Shown: positions 20,836 to 64,000 of the stretch, one piece after another
How the letters are laid out: every line of letters begins with the position of its first letter
Position numbering within the stretch: position 1 is the first letter of the stretch
Source: Octopus sinensis
Taxonomy: Eukaryota
Reading direction: 5' to 3'
Assembly: GCF_006345805.1 (NCBI RefSeq)
Contig: NC_043003.1
Location: 38,254,001-38,318,000, forward strand
Length of the DNA stretch: 64,000 nt
Made by a program: the position numbers and the translations under genes
The notes under the pieces: model-generated
Seen by the model: the letters and a program-made list of their open reading frames with translations, nothing else
The model's database searches: none
What the model was told of the DNA's origin: nothing

Positions 20836-21207
20836 TTGAGTGGTCACGTGGCATTGATAGTTTTTTTTTTAAGTGGAGCGAATGATTTAGTATTCATAGT
20901 TTTAAAATAGCAGCATGTAATTTGTTCAACTCCATAACTGGTAACCAAATCATACGAAAGCCGAGCCAGCGTAAGAGTTTCTATGTCGGTCATGAACAAA
21001 CTGCAGCCTGTGGGACTTTCTGAATGGCACTTGTTAGATGTCAAATCCATTATCGCACTGAAGGAAAAGACAGGTAGGTGCAAAGACATGCATATAGAAT
21101 ACTTTATTAGTACATATTTCAAATAACCAAACATTAGACGCCCCTTCAAAGCGTACGGCTACAAGATAAACCCAATTTCTCATTTCAGCCTTTAGAAAAA
21201 AACACTT

Positions 21208-23179: not shown

Positions 23180-24340
23180 GTAATTATACTGTTTCCATTT
23201 CTCTCAGCCAATATTTTACATTAGCCTTCTTTCGAACTCTAGATAATTCAACATACAGCTGACCATGTAAGAAGAATTGTGTTGGAAGATATATTCCAGT
23301 TTGTTCAAAAATCTGTCCCCGTGCCTTTTTGCACGTCAAGGCAAAAGCTGACTTGACAGAAAATTGTTTGCGTGTAAATATAAATGGAAATTCTATTTCT
23401 TGAGATACATGTGGTATTCTTGGAACTAGCAGAGTTGATCCTGCATAAGGACCAGAAGCAACCTCAGCTTCACTAACATAATTATGTAAACTGACAATGG
23501 TGTAGTGTGTGCTATTGCAATGTCCATTAGTAGCATCTAAATTTCTCAGAAGCATTATGCATCGTTTTTTCTTCAGTTTGAGAATGTGTGGTGAAAACCC
23601 TGATGGTGTAAGTTTGTTGATGAACTCGATTGGGTATAGAGTTTCATTATCGACTGTATCTGAGCTTCTGTATATTTTTTTAGCTCACCAGGGATCATGG
23701 TCAACAGAAAATCATTCACAAATTGTGCTGCTTCATTTGTTGGAGTAACGATGGTTCTATTTGCAAGCCACACAGGGTTTGTGAAGTTATTTTTGAGGTC
23801 AGCATATACAAAATCACATAGATCTGAAAGAGTACTACTTTCAAGGTAAGGGTCATTGGGTAGTTTAAATTTGAATTTCCCTTGGCTTTGTTCAACGGAA
23901 ATGTTACCATTTCCTAAATCAAGAAGATAAGTAGAAAACTCTCTTTCATCAGAATGATTGATTGTCAACTCCACTACTTCCACATGATCGCAAAGAAAAG
24001 ATCTCTTTAGTGTTGCATCAACAATTTGTGATCTGACACCATTATTTTGAAGGAGAGTGTTCACCTCTCGAGATACCTTAATGTGTAGCAGAAACAGAAT
24101 CATGTCTACGTCTCCGTGCATATTCAGGCATCTGTTTCAGTCGCTTTGCCCTGGTCTCATCTGTTTCAGTTGCCCGTCTTTCTCTCTGCCGTTGTACCTT
24201 TGCTGCTTTTTCAGTCGCATATTATATATAAATGAAAGCTCGTTAAAAACTATCTCGTTTAGCGTGCTAGAAATAGCAGCGATCACGTAGTTATTATTAT
24301 AAGGTTTATAGCGTTCCAAGTACCCATACCAACAAAATAA
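23180..24340 (-). mobile_element. Helitron RepHel remnant (Pif1-like helicase)
   Basis: FSTYLLDLGNG; WLANRTIVTPTNE..VNDFLL; LLRNLDATNGHCN; VPRIP..FPFIFTRKQFSVKSAFALTCKKARGQ..GIYL..FLHGQLYVELSRV (Pif1 C-terminal motifs), with frameshifts. Confidence 0.9.
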
Positions 24341-24552: not shown

Positions 24553-25130
24553 TCAAAAACTAGCACTATGACCCTTTTGGATGCACTTGGCCCGGCGGTC
24601 CACAAGCTTGCGTACTCCCTTCAAGAAGAAGGTTTTCGGTTGGTCGTGCAGCCATTTATGCACCGCTTCTTTCACATCTTCATCCGTAGGAAATCGACGA
24701 CATCGCAAACCATCTTTGAGCGGCCCCAAAAATTGATTGTCGGAAGGGGCGAGATCTGGGGTGTAGGCAGGGTATTCTAGCCCTTCAAAACCCAATCGGG
24801 TAATGGTTTCAACGGTCTGGGTGGTCGTGTGTGGGCTTGCATTGTCATGCAACAACAAAACTTTCTTCGACAATACGCTTCGGTGTTTGGTGCGAATTGC
24901 TGGCTTCTGTTTGTTGGCCAGCAAAGCAATGTATCTTGCACTGTTGATCATACACCCCTTTTCCAGAGAAATCGGATCGCCCCACTTTGTTCTTATTTGG
25001 TACACATTGCAAGTGGAGCGGCCATGCATACACTGTAAAGCCAGAAAGAGAAATGGTGTGATCAGGCTCAAACTTTGATCAAGTAACCACAATAGTACCA
25101 ACTGTAACCAGGCATGCGCAGAAGGCAGTG
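24553..25130 (-). mobile_element. Mariner transposase C-terminal fragment (DD34D)
   Basis: LLLHDNASPHT..LEYPAYTPDLAPSD..GPLKDGL..DEDVKEAVHKWL..KLVDR..KCI. Confidence 0.9.
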
Positions 25131-44610: not shown

Positions 44611-44639
44611 ATCATCATTATCATCATCATTATCATTAC

Positions 44640-44675
<36 letters not shown>

Positions 44676-44920: not shown

Positions 44921-44939
44921 ATTATCATCATCATCATCA

Positions 44940-44988
<49 letters not shown>

Positions 44989-45002
44989 CATTATCATCGT
45001 CG

Positions 45003-45035
<33 letters not shown>

Positions 45036-45178
45036 CCAGTATCATGATCATCATCATATCATTATTAAATTATACAATTCTGCTTCTCTTTCCAGTGATT
45101 GATTCATCATTCCCGAAGAGAGTGTGTCCTGCCGCCATAGACAAACTTGGAGCACACCTTGAAGATTTGTTAGGCAAT

Positions 45179-45548
45179 ATGAGTCAAAAATTATACCGCA
45201 ACAACAGTAACGACAGGAGTCTAAGTTCCAACAGCAGCACCGGTAGTAGAAGCAGTCAAACTAGTAGCAATGGTGATGGCGATAGCCTCAAGTGGTCGGA
45301 ACAAAGTTACAGTGTCGGTGACATTTTGGACAAGTTTCGACTGCCTCAAATCGTTCGGTTGCATGCGAGGGGACAACCAGTACATTCAAGCTTACCGATA
45401 CCGTTCAACATTGCTCGTGAACAGTTACTGTTCTTCGATTCAAGAAACATTCGGCAGTTGATTGCTGAAAATTTAGTAGACACATCGGAACCCGGATCAA
45501 ACATGGATTCGTACTTGGAAGATGTTGTCATTCCTGAAGACTATCCAG
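45179..45548 (+). CDS. CABIT-domain (GAREM/THEMIS-like) protein, coding exon 1
   Basis: Acceptor ...cttctctttccag at 45094-45095; ATG at 45179 in a frame open across the whole exon; donor GTTAGT at 45549 (phase 1). Translation LKWSEQSYSVGDILDKFRLPQIVRL...LLFFDSRNIRQLIAENL...VVIPEDYPG resembles the GAREM CABIT N-terminus (VKWS...LLVSTYRLPQIARL...YLLIHS...IEIPVHYAG), recalled from memory. Confidence 0.8.
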
Positions 45549-45628
45549 GTTAGTGTTGATTCATTGGGATTTTTTAAATGTTTCTTAAATGCTTCACACA
45601 CACACACACACAAACACTCACACTATTT

Positions 45629-45680
<52 letters not shown>

Positions 45681-45682
<2 letters not shown>

Positions 45683-45846
45683 CTACCAAAAACCTGAGCA
45701 AATATAAAGATCTTGAAATAGAAATCAGCAAAATGTGGAACCAGAAGACTAAAACAATACCTGTTGTCATAGGTGCCCTGGGAATGATAGCAAAAGGGGC
45801 TGATTGCTACCTAACTCAGATACCAGGAAACCTAAAAATGGCATAA
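45681..45846 (+). mobile_element. R4/Dong-like RLE fragment in the CABIT gene intron
   Basis: KNLSKYKDLEIEISKMWNQKTKTIPVVIGALGMIAKG immediately after (TAA)n 45629-45680. Confidence 0.8.
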
Positions 45847-46405
45847 GACTTCTGCAATGCAGAGATCGCATTTGTTCTTATAATCGCTATACGGTTTGGC
45901 ATGTGTAACAATAGACCATTTCATACTGTATACAACTAAGGTGTGTGTTAGGTTATGAATGAGCCTAGATAGAAAAGTACTATTAGTTTTCGTTTGAGAT
46001 TTATAGCTAGTGAATCATTACAAATTCTCGCCTTGAAGGTGGTACTACACGTGCCAATATATATATACAAACTTGGAATCCTCCGTGGAGACTGTGCATT
46101 TATATACGATATTTTTTCGCGAAGCATTTATTTTCTAAGGGACAGTAGGCGGGGCATCTACAGCTCTATAGATTTCTAGAAGGTGCTAAAATGGAGTTTG
46201 TGGGGTTATAACTACCTTTCTGAGTCACTTAGGGAAGGCAAAGTGCAGACGTACGATCTACTAGATACAGAAACCAAATATCCCTCCGACATACTCTATT
46301 CATCTTAAATTTGGAGAGGATGCATCCAAAAACTTAGTCTCATATTTGGAACAGAATACATCATACATACATACATGCATACACACCTATATGTACATGT
46401 GTATG

Positions 46406-46454
<49 letters not shown>

Positions 46455-46466
46455 TATATATATATA

Positions 46467-46513
<47 letters not shown>

Positions 46514-46914
46514 GAAAGGTATTGGTATCAGAAAGACCCAAAAGGTATCGGCTAAACGCCAAGTAAGTGCTATGGATAGACCACGGTTAAGCCCCAGGCT
46601 CGATAATGATATGAGTGAGGAGTCCAACGTGGGTCATGTATTAGCACGCATATGAATAAACTGACAGAATGAGATAAAAAAAAACAAAGCAGTAAATAGA
46701 TGTCATAACATTTATCATCGAAAGGTCTTACAGCTGTAAAGCTTCTTAATATTTTCCCACTCCGTGGAATTTCCGTGGGTCCCCACTAGTATTTATTAAT
46801 TGCTGTTAGTGGTTATATGTTTTCTTTATTCCCACTACTTGTCTAAACTTTTTTTCATTATTCAGATCTTAACAATAAACTGAGTTAAATATATGTGTGT
46901 TTTTGTTTCTTTTA

Positions 46915-47009
<95 letters not shown>

Positions 47010-47994
47010 ATTACATTTTTCACATTTATTTTTCTATGATGAAATATGCCTGACAGATCTGAAATGCCAAGTCTTTCGACATAACTCGATCCTGTGTAAC
47101 TTCTACAACTCAGGGTTCTCGGCTCCCAATTAACTATTCCAACTGAAATACTTTTGGTCTGCCTCAGTCGTGAGCCACGATCTTACACCTCATGTATTTC
47201 TGGCATGTTTTATCAATCTTCATTAAATATTCAAATTAGTACAGTCATTCAAAAAACACCAGTCAATGACGTTTAATAAAATTCACTTTTCAGCTCATTT
47301 CATCTGAAATTTTCTGAAGTCAATATCCTGCATTCAAAGGATATATCTGTTTTATTTATTTATGTTTTTCACAGCTGTCAAAGTCTGTTCATGTTAATTT
47401 TATATAATGTATCTTTTATACATATTCAAAAGGTGTTTTCAAATGTATTATTTTGACTAGTCTATTTTTACTTTAATTCATTGTCTTGATAATTAACTGC
47501 CGTTTGTATTCTGCTTGAAAAAATCTTGTTAGCTTGTTATGCTCTTTCTTAAGAAATTTATATGAATGAAACTCTTAATATCACATTTAGTAATAGATTC
47601 TTTTCTAATCTTGTTAAATTTTCTGCCTTTAGCATTCATGTTTTGTCTGTATAGCATGGAGTAACTCGTGTACAGTATTGTACAGCTTCATGGTGATTCA
47701 CACGCCACAACTTAGACTCTACAAGTCAGGAATTCTACTATGTATGCCTGAATAGTGAAAATGATATTAGTCATTGATTTAGATAGTCGTTTCTTCCCAG
47801 CGTAATTATTTCTAATAACGATTATTCATTTTTTAGCACGCACACGCACACGCGCGCACTTCATGAAATCTGACTTTTGTATAAAGGATGTTTTTGATGC
47901 CAACTGAGTGTGGGCGATCCAAAAAGATCTTATCCAATAATTCTAGAGATCTGGCCTTGCATTTCTAAGGTTTCAGTTCATAGTTTATTCGACC

Positions 47995-48720
47995 ATACAT
48001 ACATACATACATACATACATACATGCATACATACATGTATGCATGCATGCATACATGCATGCATACATGCATATATACATACATACATACATACATGTAT
48101 GCATTCATACATGCATATATACATACATACATACATACATACACACATACATGTATGCATGCATACATGCATATATACATACATACATGTATGCATGCAT
48201 ACATGCATACATACATACATACATGCATACATGCATATATACATACATACATGCATGGTTGCATACAGACATACTACATGCTTGCATGCATACATACATG
48301 CATGCATGCACACACATGCATGCATATATACATACAAACGTACATACATAATGCATGCAAACATGCATGCAAACATACATGCATACATACAGACATGCTT
48401 GCATACAGACATACATGCATGCATACATACATACATACATGCACGCATGCATGCATACATACATGCACGCATGCATGCATACAAACATACATACATACAT
48501 ACATGCAGGCATGTATACATACATACATATATACATACATACATTAGTACGTACATTCATAAGTACGTACATACAATCATACATACACATTCATACACAA
48601 ACACATACACACACCCATATATATGATGTGTGTATATGTACACGTATGAATGCACGTGTATGCATGTATGTGTGCATTTATGTATGCGTATATGTGTATG
48701 CATGCGTATCATGCGTGAAA
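47995..48720. repeat. Compound (CATA)/(CATG) tetranucleotide array in the intron
   Basis: Directly visible; source of the long His/Met/Tyr/Cys ORF artefacts. Confidence 0.95.
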
Positions 48721-48789
48721 GTTTAAAATGTGGAATTTAAATATATTACATCGCAAAAATAACTAAAATATTTCCATTTCTATTTGCAG

Positions 48790-49934
48790 GTTTATTTGTG
48801 CAGCCAGTAACCATAGGAAACAGTACCGAACTAATCACTTACGATAATATTGAATCTTTGGTATCACACGAAGCCAAAGGATTCCTGACTCTACACACAA
48901 TACAAGGTATTCGTAAGACATCATCTCTTGGAAGCATCAGTCAATCAAATGCAGGATCCTGTCCAAAATTGTACCCCAGAGGAAGTATATTTCTAATTGA
49001 AGAAATTCAAAAATGGTCTTTTAGTTCAAAAGGAAATCTTCAGAATAGCCATCACGCTCCTTCCATTATGAAAGTTCCTTCAGCAAACCGGAAATCCACA
49101 GTGCATTTTGCTGACTCAAACCAAACAAATGAATACGATTCTAGAGAAAACATAAACCAGATATCTAAAAGAGAAGGATCATCTAGAACATCTTCTCCAT
49201 TGTCACCAGCAAGAAAAATCCCAAGCATACAAAGGCTAAGTTCCAGTATGAATGACAACTCATTGTTAAGTAGTAGTTTGAAAACAAGACCAGTAGTTAG
49301 GTCTGCTTCCGTAGGATCATCAAGGTCAATAGATAATGGTCTAGTTCTCAAATGCAAAGATGCAAGTGGACGAAATGTCTATTTCCCGTTTCATACTGAA
49401 GGGAGTTTTATTGAAGTATTAACGCATCCAACAAACCCGAATAAACTCTCAATACAAGTGAAAGAATTGTTAAACATGAAAGTTCTTCCTCCCATGATAT
49501 GCTTTGTCTATGGCAAAAAACGTCTTTTATTAACATCTGGTTTTCTAAAACTCAAGGAGATTCAAGAACATCGATCGGTAGTTGTGTGTGCGGTAAACAG
49601 GACTTCATATGTCTTATTCGAGTTGCCTGTCACTTCAAACATGAAATTTTCTTTGTCTCTCAATAAGAATCTTTTAACGTCCCCTCATATTCAAAGAGCA
49701 TTAAATCTCTGCGAAGAGAATGCCACGAATTTCAGCAGTGATATTAAAGTGGTTACTAAGTTGTCTTCAAAGTCAATCGAGTTTGGCAACAACGGCCTCA
49801 CTACTTTCGGTTTGGAAACATTTAAACAGCTGGAAGACATAGCCGAAGTGAGTTCCAGTGAAGAAGAAGATGATGATGAAGGTACGAACAAACAGTTTAA
49901 TCGTATACCTGTCGAAGGAGTGATATATCTGTAG
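48790..49934 (+). CDS. CABIT-domain (GAREM/THEMIS-like) protein, coding exon 2
   Basis: Acceptor tatttgcag at 48788-48789; G(45548)+GT restores the frame (YPG-LFVQ). 378-aa ORF contains LKC-x7-VYFPFHTEGSF (CABIT signature hydrophobic-x-C-x7-26-hydrophobic-x-LP-hydrophobic-x3-G-x-F with L to F), then LLNMKVLPPMI and RSVVVCAV..ELPV..MKF, collinear with GAREM. Stop TAG at 49932-49934. Joined CDS 370+1145 = 1515 nt. Confidence 0.82.
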
Positions 49935-63184: not shown

Positions 63185-64000
63185 CTAGCAGAATTGCCCG
63201 GCGTTGCTCGGGGCTGAATTGCTTGAAAGTACTGTTAATGATTGCACTGAATTATGATGATTATTCAGGCAAATATTAATATAAGTTTACGGTGGGAGAT
63301 AAGGACTTAACGATCAAACGTGTGCCATTGCATTTTTTGGGGAACCAAATTTCTGATGAGCATTATAGGGGCACCAACTTTAAGTTTGAGAAAGTGTGGT
63401 GGTAGTCCGGGGTGCTCAAAGGAATTGAGTACCTCTATTGGATAGTTGATGACGTCCTCTGGGTCAGGAGTTGTATCGATAGACTGATATACATAGACTT
63501 CCCCAGGAATGAGTTTTAGCATTTCATCATTAATATGGTGAACAGTTTTATTCCTCGGGGCCAGTATAGCCTTTTTGCCAATCCAATCCATATTCTGATA
63601 ATTAGCTTGTAGATCTGGGAACACTGCATCTCTGAGATCAGGAGGCGTCTTAACAATGGTACAAATGGAATCGATGGCAATATTACCATTTTCATACCCT
63701 GGTATTTTGCCTTCGCCAAGTGCAAGGAGGGTGTGAGGAAATGCTGCTGATGTGATATTACGTCGCATATGAGCACGCATATTGGTGTGAAGTTTGAGTG
63801 TTACTTCCCTTTATTTAAAAAAATATGCATTAAAATGGAAAAAAATGATGGTAAATTATTTTTAAAATCGTAGACTCATCGTAGACGCGCGCTAATACCC
63901 AGAAGGGCTCGATATGAATCACGACTATAAGATACCCGGTTTTGGTTAAACTGCATCGCAAAATGTGGGAGTAGTTAGGAATCTAAATCGGAGTAGACAG
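63185..64000 (-). mobile_element. Non-autonomous Helitron with Pif1 helicase fragment and intact 3' terminus
   Basis: LKLHTNMRAH..LLALGEG..VFPDL..KAILAPRN..INDEML..YQSID..YPIEVLNS..PGLPPHFLKLKVGAPIMLIRNL. The 3' end on the minus strand is the hairpin cccgagcaacgccggg + CTAG|T at 63184-63212. Confidence 0.9.

What the first reader, a model, noticed from the sequence alone, without database searches (positions are those of the whole stretch)
45179..49934. Two-exon CABIT-domain gene (GAREM/THEMIS-like) in a probable cephalopod, with the signature cysteine motif intact
Seen: splice sites join two exons into a 504-aa frame with LKC-x7-VYFPFHTEGSF at 49347-49409 (Cys codon 49353-49355). Established: CABIT domains occur in vertebrate THEMIS/GAREM adaptors, and THEMIS CABIT binds and regulates SHP-1 phosphatase. 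Inference: this is an invertebrate CABIT adaptor with a single domain, an acidic stretch and no visible proline-rich Grb2-binding or SAM region in this frame. It could be a phosphatase regulator in a lineage without T cells.
Basis: partly seen in the sequence, partly recalled or inferred. Interest (0 to 1): 0.7.

Follow-up and report, generated by a model that had tools for sequence, protein, structure and literature searches.

The report
Octopus short single-CABIT adaptor gene
This is a real gene that is already catalogued (Octopus sinensis LOC115214220); it encodes a small protein built around one CABIT domain, belongs to a mollusc-wide side branch of the THEMIS/GAREM family, and its function has never been tested.

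Summary
Exon 45179-45548 joins exon 48790-49934 through GT/AG sites into a 504-aa frame, and the Cys core motif sits at 49347-49409. This protein is identical to RefSeq XP_029639192.1 (Octopus sinensis LOC115214220 isoform X3) and to an O. vulgaris entry. UniProt already calls another O. vulgaris product of the same 90% cluster a "CABIT domain-containing protein".

Pfam CABIT scores 30.5 bits against a cutoff of 24. A profile search shows that residues about 38-455 form one CABIT domain, interrupted by a 105-aa Ser-rich insertion seen only in cephalopods.

"Two-exon" is true only for the isoform X3 coding sequence. Isoform X2 adds a coding exon at 20983-21073.

The gene is not the GAREM orthologue. 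It lacks the proline-rich, conserved ITIM and SAM parts. It groups (bootstrap 177/200) with short mollusc proteins of 350-520 aa that share an acidic stretch and an invariant C-terminal hydrophobic-Tyr-hydrophobic end. Octopods also carry a separate GAREM-like paralogue and a third CABIT paralogue.

Exon 2 is under purifying selection (dN/dS 0.21).

The phosphatase-regulator idea is untested. Published structures show the signature Cys is buried and structural. Invertebrate CABIT proteins have been known since 2009. Both structure predictions failed (pLDDT about 30). Verdict: ordinary, a new member of a known kind.

The parts
20983..21073 (+). Alternative 5' coding exon of isoform X2 (MSVMNKLQPVGLSEWHLLDVKSIIALKEKT plus 1 nt); donor G|GTAGGT
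   Evidence: tblastn of XP_036360601.1 gives 30/30 identical residues; the sequence and donor were read
45096..45178 (+). 5' part of the common exon after acceptor TTTCCAG|TG. It is coding in isoforms X1 and X2 (VIDSSFPKRVCPAAIDKLGAHLEDLLGN) and 5' UTR in isoform X3
45179..45548 (+). Coding exon 1 of the 504-aa form: Ser/Asn-rich N-terminus (residues 1-37) and the first part of CABIT, ending in the family's most conserved motif IPEDYPG
45549..48789 (+). Phase-1 GT...AG intron of 3241 bp, full of microsatellites. Its position (inside the invariant Gly codon after IPEDYxG) recurs in relatives
   Evidence: ORF fragments of relatives stop or start at this motif. The acceptor is conserved in another Octopus genome contig, L001
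48790..49934 (+). Coding exon 2 including stop TAG 49932-49934
   Evidence: dN/dS 0.21 against L001
45290..45548 (+). CABIT domain, N-terminal half, first piece (residues 38-123)
   Evidence: The profile of the short family aligns continuously (positions 25-367) to Pfam-positive CABIT proteins
48790..49019 (+). CABIT domain, N-terminal half, second piece (residues 124-200)
49020..49334 (+). Cephalopod-specific Ser-rich insertion (residues 201-305, 26% Ser) just upstream of the Cys core motif. It holds two basic-residue phosphorylation-type motifs (RKST 49089-49100 and RSAS 49299-49310) that are also kept in the distant relative P0008
   Evidence: Absent or much shorter in the oyster and snail family members aligned; composition; more relaxed selection, pN/pS 0.44 against 0.13 in the CABIT C-terminal half
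49335..49784 (+). CABIT domain, C-terminal half (residues 306-455)
   Evidence: The Pfam CABIT match covers protein residues 242-412, profile positions 114-240 of 255; family profile
49347..49409 (+). Cys-containing core motif LKCKDASGRNVYFPFHTEGSF (Cys312 = 49353-49355)
   Evidence: Cys312, Gly328 and Phe330 fall in columns at least 90% conserved across 26 CABIT proteins
49851..49880 (+). Acidic, casein-kinase-2-type stretch SSSEEEDDDE (residues 478-487). An acidic stretch lies at this place throughout the short family
49911..49931 (+). C-terminal tail VEGVIYL-COOH. The penultimate Tyr503 (49926-49928) is invariant in the short family (ends are IYL, IYI, VYV, FYM, LYI)

Best explanation
This is the protein-coding gene LOC115214220 of Octopus sinensis.

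Shown:
- Its main product is a 504-aa cytoplasmic-type protein. It has no Pfam match other than CABIT.
- The only recognisable folded module is one CABIT domain (residues about 38-455).
- That domain is interrupted, just before the Cys core motif, by a 105-residue Ser-rich insertion seen only in cephalopods.
- After the domain come an acidic stretch and an invariant hydrophobic-Tyr-hydrophobic C-terminus.
- The gene belongs to a short, CABIT-only branch found in bivalves, gastropods and cephalopods. This branch is paralogous to the GAREM-like CABIT+SAM genes of the same animals.
- The gene is under purifying selection.

Inferred:
- Like every studied CABIT protein (THEMIS, GAREM, Sano), it is a non-enzymatic scaffold that acts by binding other signalling proteins.
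- The CABIT fold is the binding platform, and the conserved Cys is a buried packing residue rather than a reactive one.
- The Ser-rich loop, with its conserved RKST and RSAS sites, is a phospho-regulatory element.
- The acidic stretch and Tyr-containing tail form a second docking element. It could be a terminal beta-strand that packs on the domain or on a partner, or a class II PDZ-type ligand.
- Because it lacks the Grb2-binding proline-rich motif and a conserved Shp2-binding ITIM, it most likely does not work as a Grb2/SHP adaptor in the way GAREM does.
For: - Gene model and identity to RefSeq.
- Pfam CABIT above the gathering score.
- Relatives P0009, P0010, P0013, P0014, P0015, P0023 and P0080 are Pfam CABIT-positive across profile positions about 1-244 of 255, while three others (P0008, P0011, P0020) gave no Pfam match.
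- The profile search of 1.84 billion representative proteins gave 83 hits. Every one that was checked against Pfam or carries a UniProt name is a CABIT protein.
- The family profile gives single continuous alignments to GAREM-like proteins.
- Short clade including the octopus gene: bootstrap 177/200 on 325 columns and 37 taxa.
- Shared acidic stretch plus invariant Tyr503 tail.
- Insertion absent from the non-cephalopod members aligned.
- No SAM domain, no conserved PxxP or ITIM.
- dN/dS 0.21.
- Literature: the Cys is buried (10.1101/2024.10.01.616165; PMC13381594). GAREM needs a proline-rich motif and an ITIM for Grb2 and Shp2 (PMC6852768).
Against: - No fold evidence. Both AlphaFold runs gave pLDDT 29-30 because only 3-4 sequences were permitted in the alignment.
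- No sequence link to any solved structure.
- No transcript or junction reads could be examined. The only extra octopus contig found was genomic.
- No binding partner is known for any member of the short clade.
- The roles proposed for the loop and the tail rest on motif patterns alone.
- Octopus species do carry one PxxPxR (PLSPAR, residues 260-265) and one ITIM/YxN-like ITYDNI (139-144). A lineage-specific Grb2 or SHP contact is therefore not excluded.
Confidence: 0.6

Rival explanations
1. It is the cephalopod orthologue of GAREM. On this view it is a Grb2- and Shp2-binding adaptor that tunes ERK signalling downstream of receptor tyrosine kinases, and the reader's model has simply truncated it.
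For: - It has a CABIT domain.
- GAREM-like mollusc proteins are among the best non-cephalopod hits: P0010 at 93.5 bits and P0014 at 79 bits.
- PLSPAR fits PxxPxR, and ITYDNI fits both ITIM and YxN in Octopus species.
Against: - The stop at 49932 is authentic. All three RefSeq isoforms retrieved (X1, X2 and X3) and the O. bimaculoides and Argonauta proteins end ...EGVIYL, the same kind of end as the oyster and snail short proteins.
- There is no SAM domain and no conserved proline-rich motif. PLSPAR is lost in Argonauta, and the Tyr of ITYDNI is lost in P0008 and in the other short-family members.
- The tree separates it from the SAM-tailed clade.
- Octopods have their own GAREM-like gene ending ...FIKGWRP (P0028, named after LOC115214239).
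Confidence: 0.07
2. The single CABIT domain binds and regulates an SH2-domain tyrosine phosphatase (the SHP-1/2 or Csw orthologue), as THEMIS does.
For: THEMIS CABIT1 binds SHP1 and protects it from oxidation once it has been phosphorylated by LCK (PMC13320886). THEMIS-mediated inactivation of SHP1 through the CABIT domains has also been reported (PMC10114920). The octopus protein keeps the nearly invariant Tyr122 in IPEDYPG and the core motif.
Against: - Isolated THEMIS CABIT2 did not bind or affect SHP1 (10.1101/2024.10.01.616165).
- The Cys is buried and structural.
- The profile of the mollusc family does not detect any THEMIS chain in the Protein Data Bank copy, so the octopus domain is remote from THEMIS.
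- Tyr503 has only one residue after it, so it cannot form a normal SH2 ligand. This last point is my inference from known SH2 specificity.
Confidence: 0.12
3. It works like Drosophila Sano. On this view it is an apically enriched cytoplasmic CABIT protein that binds Dishevelled and feeds into planar cell polarity and epithelial morphogenesis.
For: Sano is the only invertebrate CABIT-family protein with genetics. [quoted passage not shown] The octopus protein likewise lacks the Grb2 and SHP motifs.
Against: Sano is 778 aa, and no arthropod protein was identified among the named hits. No Sano sequence was compared here. The Dsh-binding part of Sano is not mapped.
Confidence: 0.1
4. It is a decaying duplicate of a neighbouring CABIT gene and has no function of its own.
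For: Octopods have at least three CABIT paralogues. One of them (LOC115214103) has accession numbers consecutive with this gene's, which suggests a tandem pair. The domain carries a large low-complexity insertion.
Against: - The frame is intact in O. sinensis, O. vulgaris, O. bimaculoides, Argonauta and an unnamed Octopus.
- dN/dS is 0.21 overall and lower still in the CABIT C-terminal half and the tail.
- The clade predates the bivalve/gastropod/cephalopod split.
Confidence: 0.03

Closest known systems
GAREM1/GAREM2 (FAM59A/B), vertebrate single-CABIT adaptors, and their mollusc counterparts (for example Crassostrea angulata LOC128166487, 940 aa)
   Same: Both have one N-terminal CABIT domain with the LPxVV, IPEDYxGxF and Cys core motifs. 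The family profile aligns continuously across the whole domain.
   Different: The octopus protein has no proline-rich Grb2-binding region, no conserved ITIM for Shp2 and no SAM-type C-terminus. It is about half the length and sits in a different clade. It has a cephalopod-specific insertion and an acidic stretch plus Tyr-containing tail.
THEMIS/THEMIS2 (tandem-CABIT adaptors of lymphocytes; PDB 9I3P)
   Same: Both match the same Pfam family (PF12736) and have a Cys-containing core motif.
   Different: The octopus protein has one CABIT domain, not two, and no proline-rich sequence. It is too distant for the mollusc profile to reach any solved structure by sequence. The fold comparison failed.
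Drosophila Serrano (Sano)
   Same: Both are invertebrate, cytoplasmic, single-domain members of the same superfamily with no Grb2 or SHP link (PMC2776533).
   Different: Sano is 778 aa and arthropod-specific in sequence. Its Dsh binding is shown, while nothing is known for the octopus protein. The two were not compared directly here.
Short mollusc CABIT-only proteins (Crassostrea virginica LOC111118896/LOC111118334 385 aa; Candidula unifasciata CAG5120065 422 aa; Babylonia areolata LOC143280329 517 aa; Nucella lapillus KAL8584678 389 aa)
   Same: They share the clade (bootstrap 177/200), the architecture, the acidic stretch, the invariant penultimate Tyr and the intron position.
   Different: The cephalopod proteins carry the 105-aa Ser-rich insertion and a Ser/Asn-rich N-terminus. 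All of these proteins are uncharacterised.

Membership tests
CABIT domain family (Pfam PF12736) | Match to the Pfam CABIT profile at or above the gathering score | tested here: met
   30.5 bits against a cutoff of 24, E 3.1e-7, protein residues 242-412 matching profile positions 114-240 of 255. The match is partial because of the insertion.
CABIT domain family (Pfam PF12736) | Cys-containing core motif | tested here: met
   Cys312, Gly328 and Phe330 of LKCKDASGRNVYFPFHTEGSF lie in columns at least 90% conserved across 26 family members (coordinates)
CABIT domain family (Pfam PF12736) | The N-terminal half of the domain is also homologous, not only the Cys region | tested here: met
   The short-family profile aligns in one piece (profile positions 25-367) to proteins whose Pfam CABIT match spans profile positions about 1-244. 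Pro56, Pro119 and Gly124 are invariant and Tyr122 is at least 90% conserved.
CABIT domain family (Pfam PF12736) | All-beta core with an inserted SH3-like head, as in the THEMIS structures | tested here: inconclusive
   Two AlphaFold2 runs gave mean pLDDT 29.0 and 30.0, so no fold search was worthwhile
GAREM | Proline-rich motif that binds the Grb2 SH3 domains | tested here: not met
   The only candidate is PLSPAR (260-265) in Octopus species. It is absent in Argonauta and in the other short-family members.
GAREM | Tyrosine-phosphorylated ITIM that binds the Shp2 SH2 domains | tested here: not met
   The only ITIM-like site, ITYDNI (139-144), lies inside the domain. Its Tyr is not kept in P0008, oyster or snail members. 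Phosphorylation itself cannot be tested here.
GAREM | C-terminal SAM domain | tested here: not met
   The protein ends 49 residues after the CABIT domain and has no SAM match. The SAM-type tail ...FIKGWRP is on another octopod gene (P0028).
GAREM | Orthology by phylogeny | tested here: not met
   It groups with the short clade at 177/200 bootstraps, apart from the SAM-tailed clade. Vertebrate GAREM sequences were not in the tree.
THEMIS | [quoted passage not shown] | tested here: not met
   There is one Pfam stretch and one domain in the profile alignments, and no proline-rich sequence
THEMIS | Binding and regulation of SHP-1 | not testable with these tools
   This needs biochemistry. Literature only (PMC13320886; 10.1101/2024.10.01.616165).
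Sano (Drosophila) | Binding to Dishevelled; planar cell polarity phenotypes | not testable with these tools
   Literature only (PMC2776533). No Sano sequence was compared.

The most novel reading that the evidence does not exclude
The short CABIT-only proteins form an undescribed, ancient mollusc-wide subfamily. Its conserved acidic stretch plus hydrophobic-Tyr-hydrophobic C-terminus would be a dedicated docking element, either a class II PDZ-type ligand or a strand that completes the CABIT fold. Cephalopods would then have added a phospho-regulated 105-residue loop beside the Cys core. That would give CABIT a signalling mode independent of Grb2 and SHP.
Probability: 0.3. Interest if true: 0.35.

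Novelty: new member of a known kind. Interest (0 to 1): 0.2.

Why it matters
The value is modest. The finding shows that a raw-sequence reader recovered a correct gene model and domain call, but the gene, its isoforms and its CABIT label are already in RefSeq and UniProt. CABIT proteins outside vertebrates have been known since 2009.

The useful new points are comparative:
- Molluscs carry at least three CABIT lineages: GAREM-like with a SAM-type tail, a lineage ending in Val, and the short lineage with a Tyr-containing tail.
- The short lineage lacks every motif that links vertebrate CABIT proteins to Grb2 and SHP phosphatases.

If someone wants to learn what a bare CABIT domain does, this minimal architecture is a convenient subject. 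No long-standing question becomes testable because of it.

Tried and rejected
1. Structure prediction failed twice: octopod-only alignment A1, pLDDT 29.0, and A4 with one distant relative added, pLDDT 30.0. No fold search was run on these models.

2. Three word-index homologue searches returned only octopod proteins plus one distant hit. The first two were capped at the 8000 candidates sharing most words; I suspect low-complexity words swamped that list. The third used trimmed sequences, scored only 5546 candidates and still found little.

3. Sequence and profile searches of the Protein Data Bank found no THEMIS or GAREM chain. They gave only weak matches, probably chance, to the BAG6 ubiquitin-like domain (E 0.016).

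4. I looked for a spliced transcript contig. The 504-aa and 562-aa proteins are not on record by exact match. The contig carrying P0003 is genomic, with the intron end intact.

5. I checked whether the neighbouring paralogue LOC115214103 lies in the window. It does not; only a paralogous hit on exon 1 was found.

6. I considered a link between a PDZ-type tail and Sano's binding to Dishevelled. [quoted passage not shown]

7. I considered Tyr503 as an SH2 docking site and rejected it, because only one residue follows it.

9. Two papers were not held in the library.

10. Literature searches pairing CABIT with invertebrates or molluscs found nothing relevant: the first listed only unrelated papers, and none of the ten papers listed by the second contains the word CABIT.
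Full report
**Observation**

The region was read and re-translated. ATG 45179 opens a frame that runs to a CAG|GTTAGT donor after 45548. A polypyrimidine-rich acceptor, TTTGCAG|G, precedes 48790. The frame then runs to TAG at 49932-49934. The two exons are 370 and 1145 nt, giving 1515 nt, which is 504 codons plus stop. The intron is phase 1. The 378-codon open stretch of exon 2 is the longest ORF in the 64-kb, 36% GC window and is far beyond chance.

**Identity**

A search of public proteins found a 100% match to Octopus sinensis LOC115214220. UniProt names the 553-aa O. vulgaris member of the same 90% cluster (CAI9725610.1) "CABIT domain-containing protein".

Orthologues are O. bimaculoides LOC106869748 (503 aa) and an Argonauta hians protein (528 aa, 75% identical). 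A more distant unnamed relative, P0008 (45% identical), has the same end.

Isoform X2 (562 aa) adds 58 N-terminal residues. Thirty of them come from an exon at 20983-21073 (donor G|GTAGGT). The rest come from the part of the common exon between the acceptor at 45095/45096 and the ATG. No part of the X1-specific N-terminus was found in the window. So "two-exon" describes the isoform X3 coding sequence, not the gene, which spans at least 29 kb here.

**Is it a working gene?**

Exon 2 was compared with the homologous exon on a genomic contig from another Octopus (L001, from run SRR11869384). This gave dS 0.187, dN 0.039 and dN/dS 0.21. Constraint is tightest in the CABIT C-terminal half and the tail, and more relaxed in the insertion. 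The splice acceptor is conserved there.

The spliced product aligns without a gap across the junction to oyster and snail proteins. ORF fragments of many relatives end or begin exactly at the IPEDYxG motif, which indicates an old, conserved intron position.

Direct junction reads could not be obtained. Exact-match look-ups found no transcript contig.

**Domain**

Pfam CABIT (PF12736) scores 30.5 bits against a gathering score of 24 (E 3.1e-7) over residues 242-412. That partial match understates the case.

A profile of the octopod proteins was searched against 1.84 billion representative proteins and found 83 relatives at E up to 1e-3. Those that carry names are mollusc or brachiopod proteins, and UniProt labels several of them as CABIT domain-containing. 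Six of the nine non-octopod relatives scanned (P0009, P0010, P0013, P0014, P0015, P0023), together with P0080, match Pfam CABIT, collectively over profile positions about 1-244 of 255. P0008, P0011 and P0020 gave no Pfam match.

A profile of the short family aligns to these proteins in one continuous piece. Residues about 38-455 of the octopus protein are therefore one CABIT domain.

In a 26-sequence alignment, Pro56, Pro119 and Gly124 are invariant. The following are at least 90% conserved: Ile118 and Tyr122 of IPEDYPG, Phe126, and Cys312, Gly328 and Phe330 of the core motif. The codon of the invariant Gly124 is the one split by the intron.

**Architecture beyond the domain**

- Between GSIFLIEEIQ and LKCKD, the cephalopod proteins carry about 105 extra residues (201-305, 26% Ser). 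Oyster and snail members lack these or have a much shorter loop.
- Inside this loop, RKST (224-227) and RSAS (294-297) are kept even in the 45%-identical P0008 (as ARKST and RSRSAS). These are basic-residue kinase-type sites.
- After the domain come a short helix-like FKQLEDIAE, an acidic stretch SSSEEEDDDE and the end VEGVIYL.

**Which CABIT lineage?**

A neighbour-joining tree of 325 domain columns from 37 proteins places the octopus protein with short proteins (352-517 aa in the tree) from Crassostrea virginica, Candidula, Babylonia and an unnamed species. The bootstrap is 177/200, and tail columns were excluded. The Nucella protein, which has the same tail, was not in the tree.

All members of this clade share an acidic stretch and a C-terminus of the form hydrophobic-Tyr-hydrophobic (IYL, IYI, VYV, FYM, LYI). 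Tyr503 is invariant.

Two other lineages are visible:
- Long proteins of 640-1200 aa end in a SAM-type ...FI(K/R)GWRP tail. This is the GAREM-like architecture. The lineage includes an Argonauta protein named after O. sinensis LOC115214239 (P0028).
- A lineage ending in Val includes O. sinensis LOC115214103 (P0033, 404 aa).

LOC115214103 has accession numbers consecutive with this gene's in both O. sinensis and O. vulgaris, so the two are probably neighbours. It is not in this window.

Octopods therefore have at least three CABIT paralogues, and the gene in hand is not the GAREM orthologue.

**Tests of the adaptor motifs**

According to the literature, GAREM binds Grb2 through a proline-rich motif and Shp2 through a phosphorylated ITIM. 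It also has 14-3-3 sites and a SAM domain (PMC6852768; PMC10968029).

A motif scan found:
- one PxxPxR in the insertion (PLSPAR, 260-265) in Octopus species, lost in Argonauta; a second pattern match (PTNPNK, 337-342), kept in all the cephalopods scanned, lies in the CABIT C-terminal half, just after the Cys core motif;
- one ITIM/YxN-like ITYDNI (139-144) inside the domain, whose Tyr is absent in P0008 and in the other short-family members;
- no RxxS/TxP 14-3-3 consensus;
- no SAM domain.

- Isolated CABIT2 neither bound nor affected SHP1 (same preprint).
- CABIT1 bound SHP1 only after phosphorylation by LCK (PMC13320886).
- CABIT proteins occur from cnidarians to mammals. Drosophila Sano, a member of the family, binds Dishevelled and acts in planar polarity (PMC2776533).

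A CABIT protein in an animal without T cells is thus expected. An intact Cys says only that the fold is probably intact.

**Most likely mechanism**

Shown: a conserved, selected, single-CABIT protein with no match to any Pfam family other than CABIT, from a short mollusc lineage that lacks the Grb2, SHP and SAM modules.

Inferred:
- It is a non-enzymatic scaffold.
- The CABIT fold is its interaction surface.
- The cephalopod Ser-rich loop is a phospho-regulated element next to the core motif.
- The acidic stretch and Tyr-containing tail are a second docking element, either a terminal beta-strand or a class II PDZ-type ligand.
- Tyr503 is unlikely to be an SH2 site, because only one residue follows it.

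I put about 0.95 on the gene and domain identity, and about 0.4 on the scaffold-with-regulatory-loop-and-docking-tail picture.

**What failed**

- Profile searches of Protein Data Bank sequences did not reach THEMIS.
- Neither literature search turned up a relevant paper linking CABIT with invertebrates or molluscs; none of the ten papers listed for the mollusc search contains the word CABIT.

**Verdict**

The finding is already catalogued by automatic annotation. The functional idea is untested and rests on a premise (a functional Cys, and generic binding of CABIT to SHP-1) that recent structural work weakens. It is a new member of a known kind and of low interest. The one modest new point is a minimal, mollusc-wide CABIT-only lineage with a conserved Tyr-containing tail.

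Noticed in passing
window 20983-21073 and 45096-45178: These are alternative 5' coding sequence. An upstream exon 24 kb away (isoform X2) and the in-frame stretch before the ATG extend the protein by 58 residues. The X1-specific N-terminus was not found in the window.
   Followed up: yes
window 45549-48789: The 3.2-kb intron is largely microsatellite: (ATA)17 at 45630-45681, (TA)41 at 46402-46481, (ATCT)24 at 46915-47009, and a CATA-type array of about 620 bp at 47994-48613 that creates long spurious ORFs on both strands. There is also a short retroelement-like piece near 45690-45850, judged by eye only.
   Followed up: partly
window 44617-44675 and 44924-45062: Long (ATT)n and (ATC)n trinucleotide runs lie directly upstream of the common-exon acceptor. 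They read as poly-Tyr/His/Ser ORFs but have no homologues.
   Followed up: no
window 63307-63780 (-), 23573-24121 (-), 24553-25101 (-): These are transposon remnants. One is a PIF1/Helitron-type helicase fragment (Pif1_2B_dom, 43.7 bits, above cutoff). The others are a weaker PIF1 fragment and a DDE_3 (mariner-like) transposase fragment, both below cutoff, lying in the large upstream intron.
   Followed up: partly
outside the window (O. sinensis LOC115214103 = P0033; LOC115214239-like = P0028): Octopods carry at least three CABIT paralogues. LOC115214103 (404 aa, ends ...SETFV) has accession numbers consecutive with this gene's in two species, which suggests a tandem pair. Many members of its lineage end in Val, which resembles a PDZ-ligand end.
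   Followed up: partly
alignment A3, profile positions 108-158: The mollusc CABIT profile weakly matches the ubiquitin-like domain of BAG6 in the Protein Data Bank (E 0.016-0.03, 17 bits). This is probably chance, but it is the only structural hint obtained for the N-terminal half.
   Followed up: no
P0028 (Argonauta GAREM-like protein), core motif: The signature Cys is replaced by Ser (FLMSTDDMDRE) in this otherwise well conserved CABIT domain. This fits with the Cys being a packing residue rather than a catalytic or redox one.
   Followed up: no
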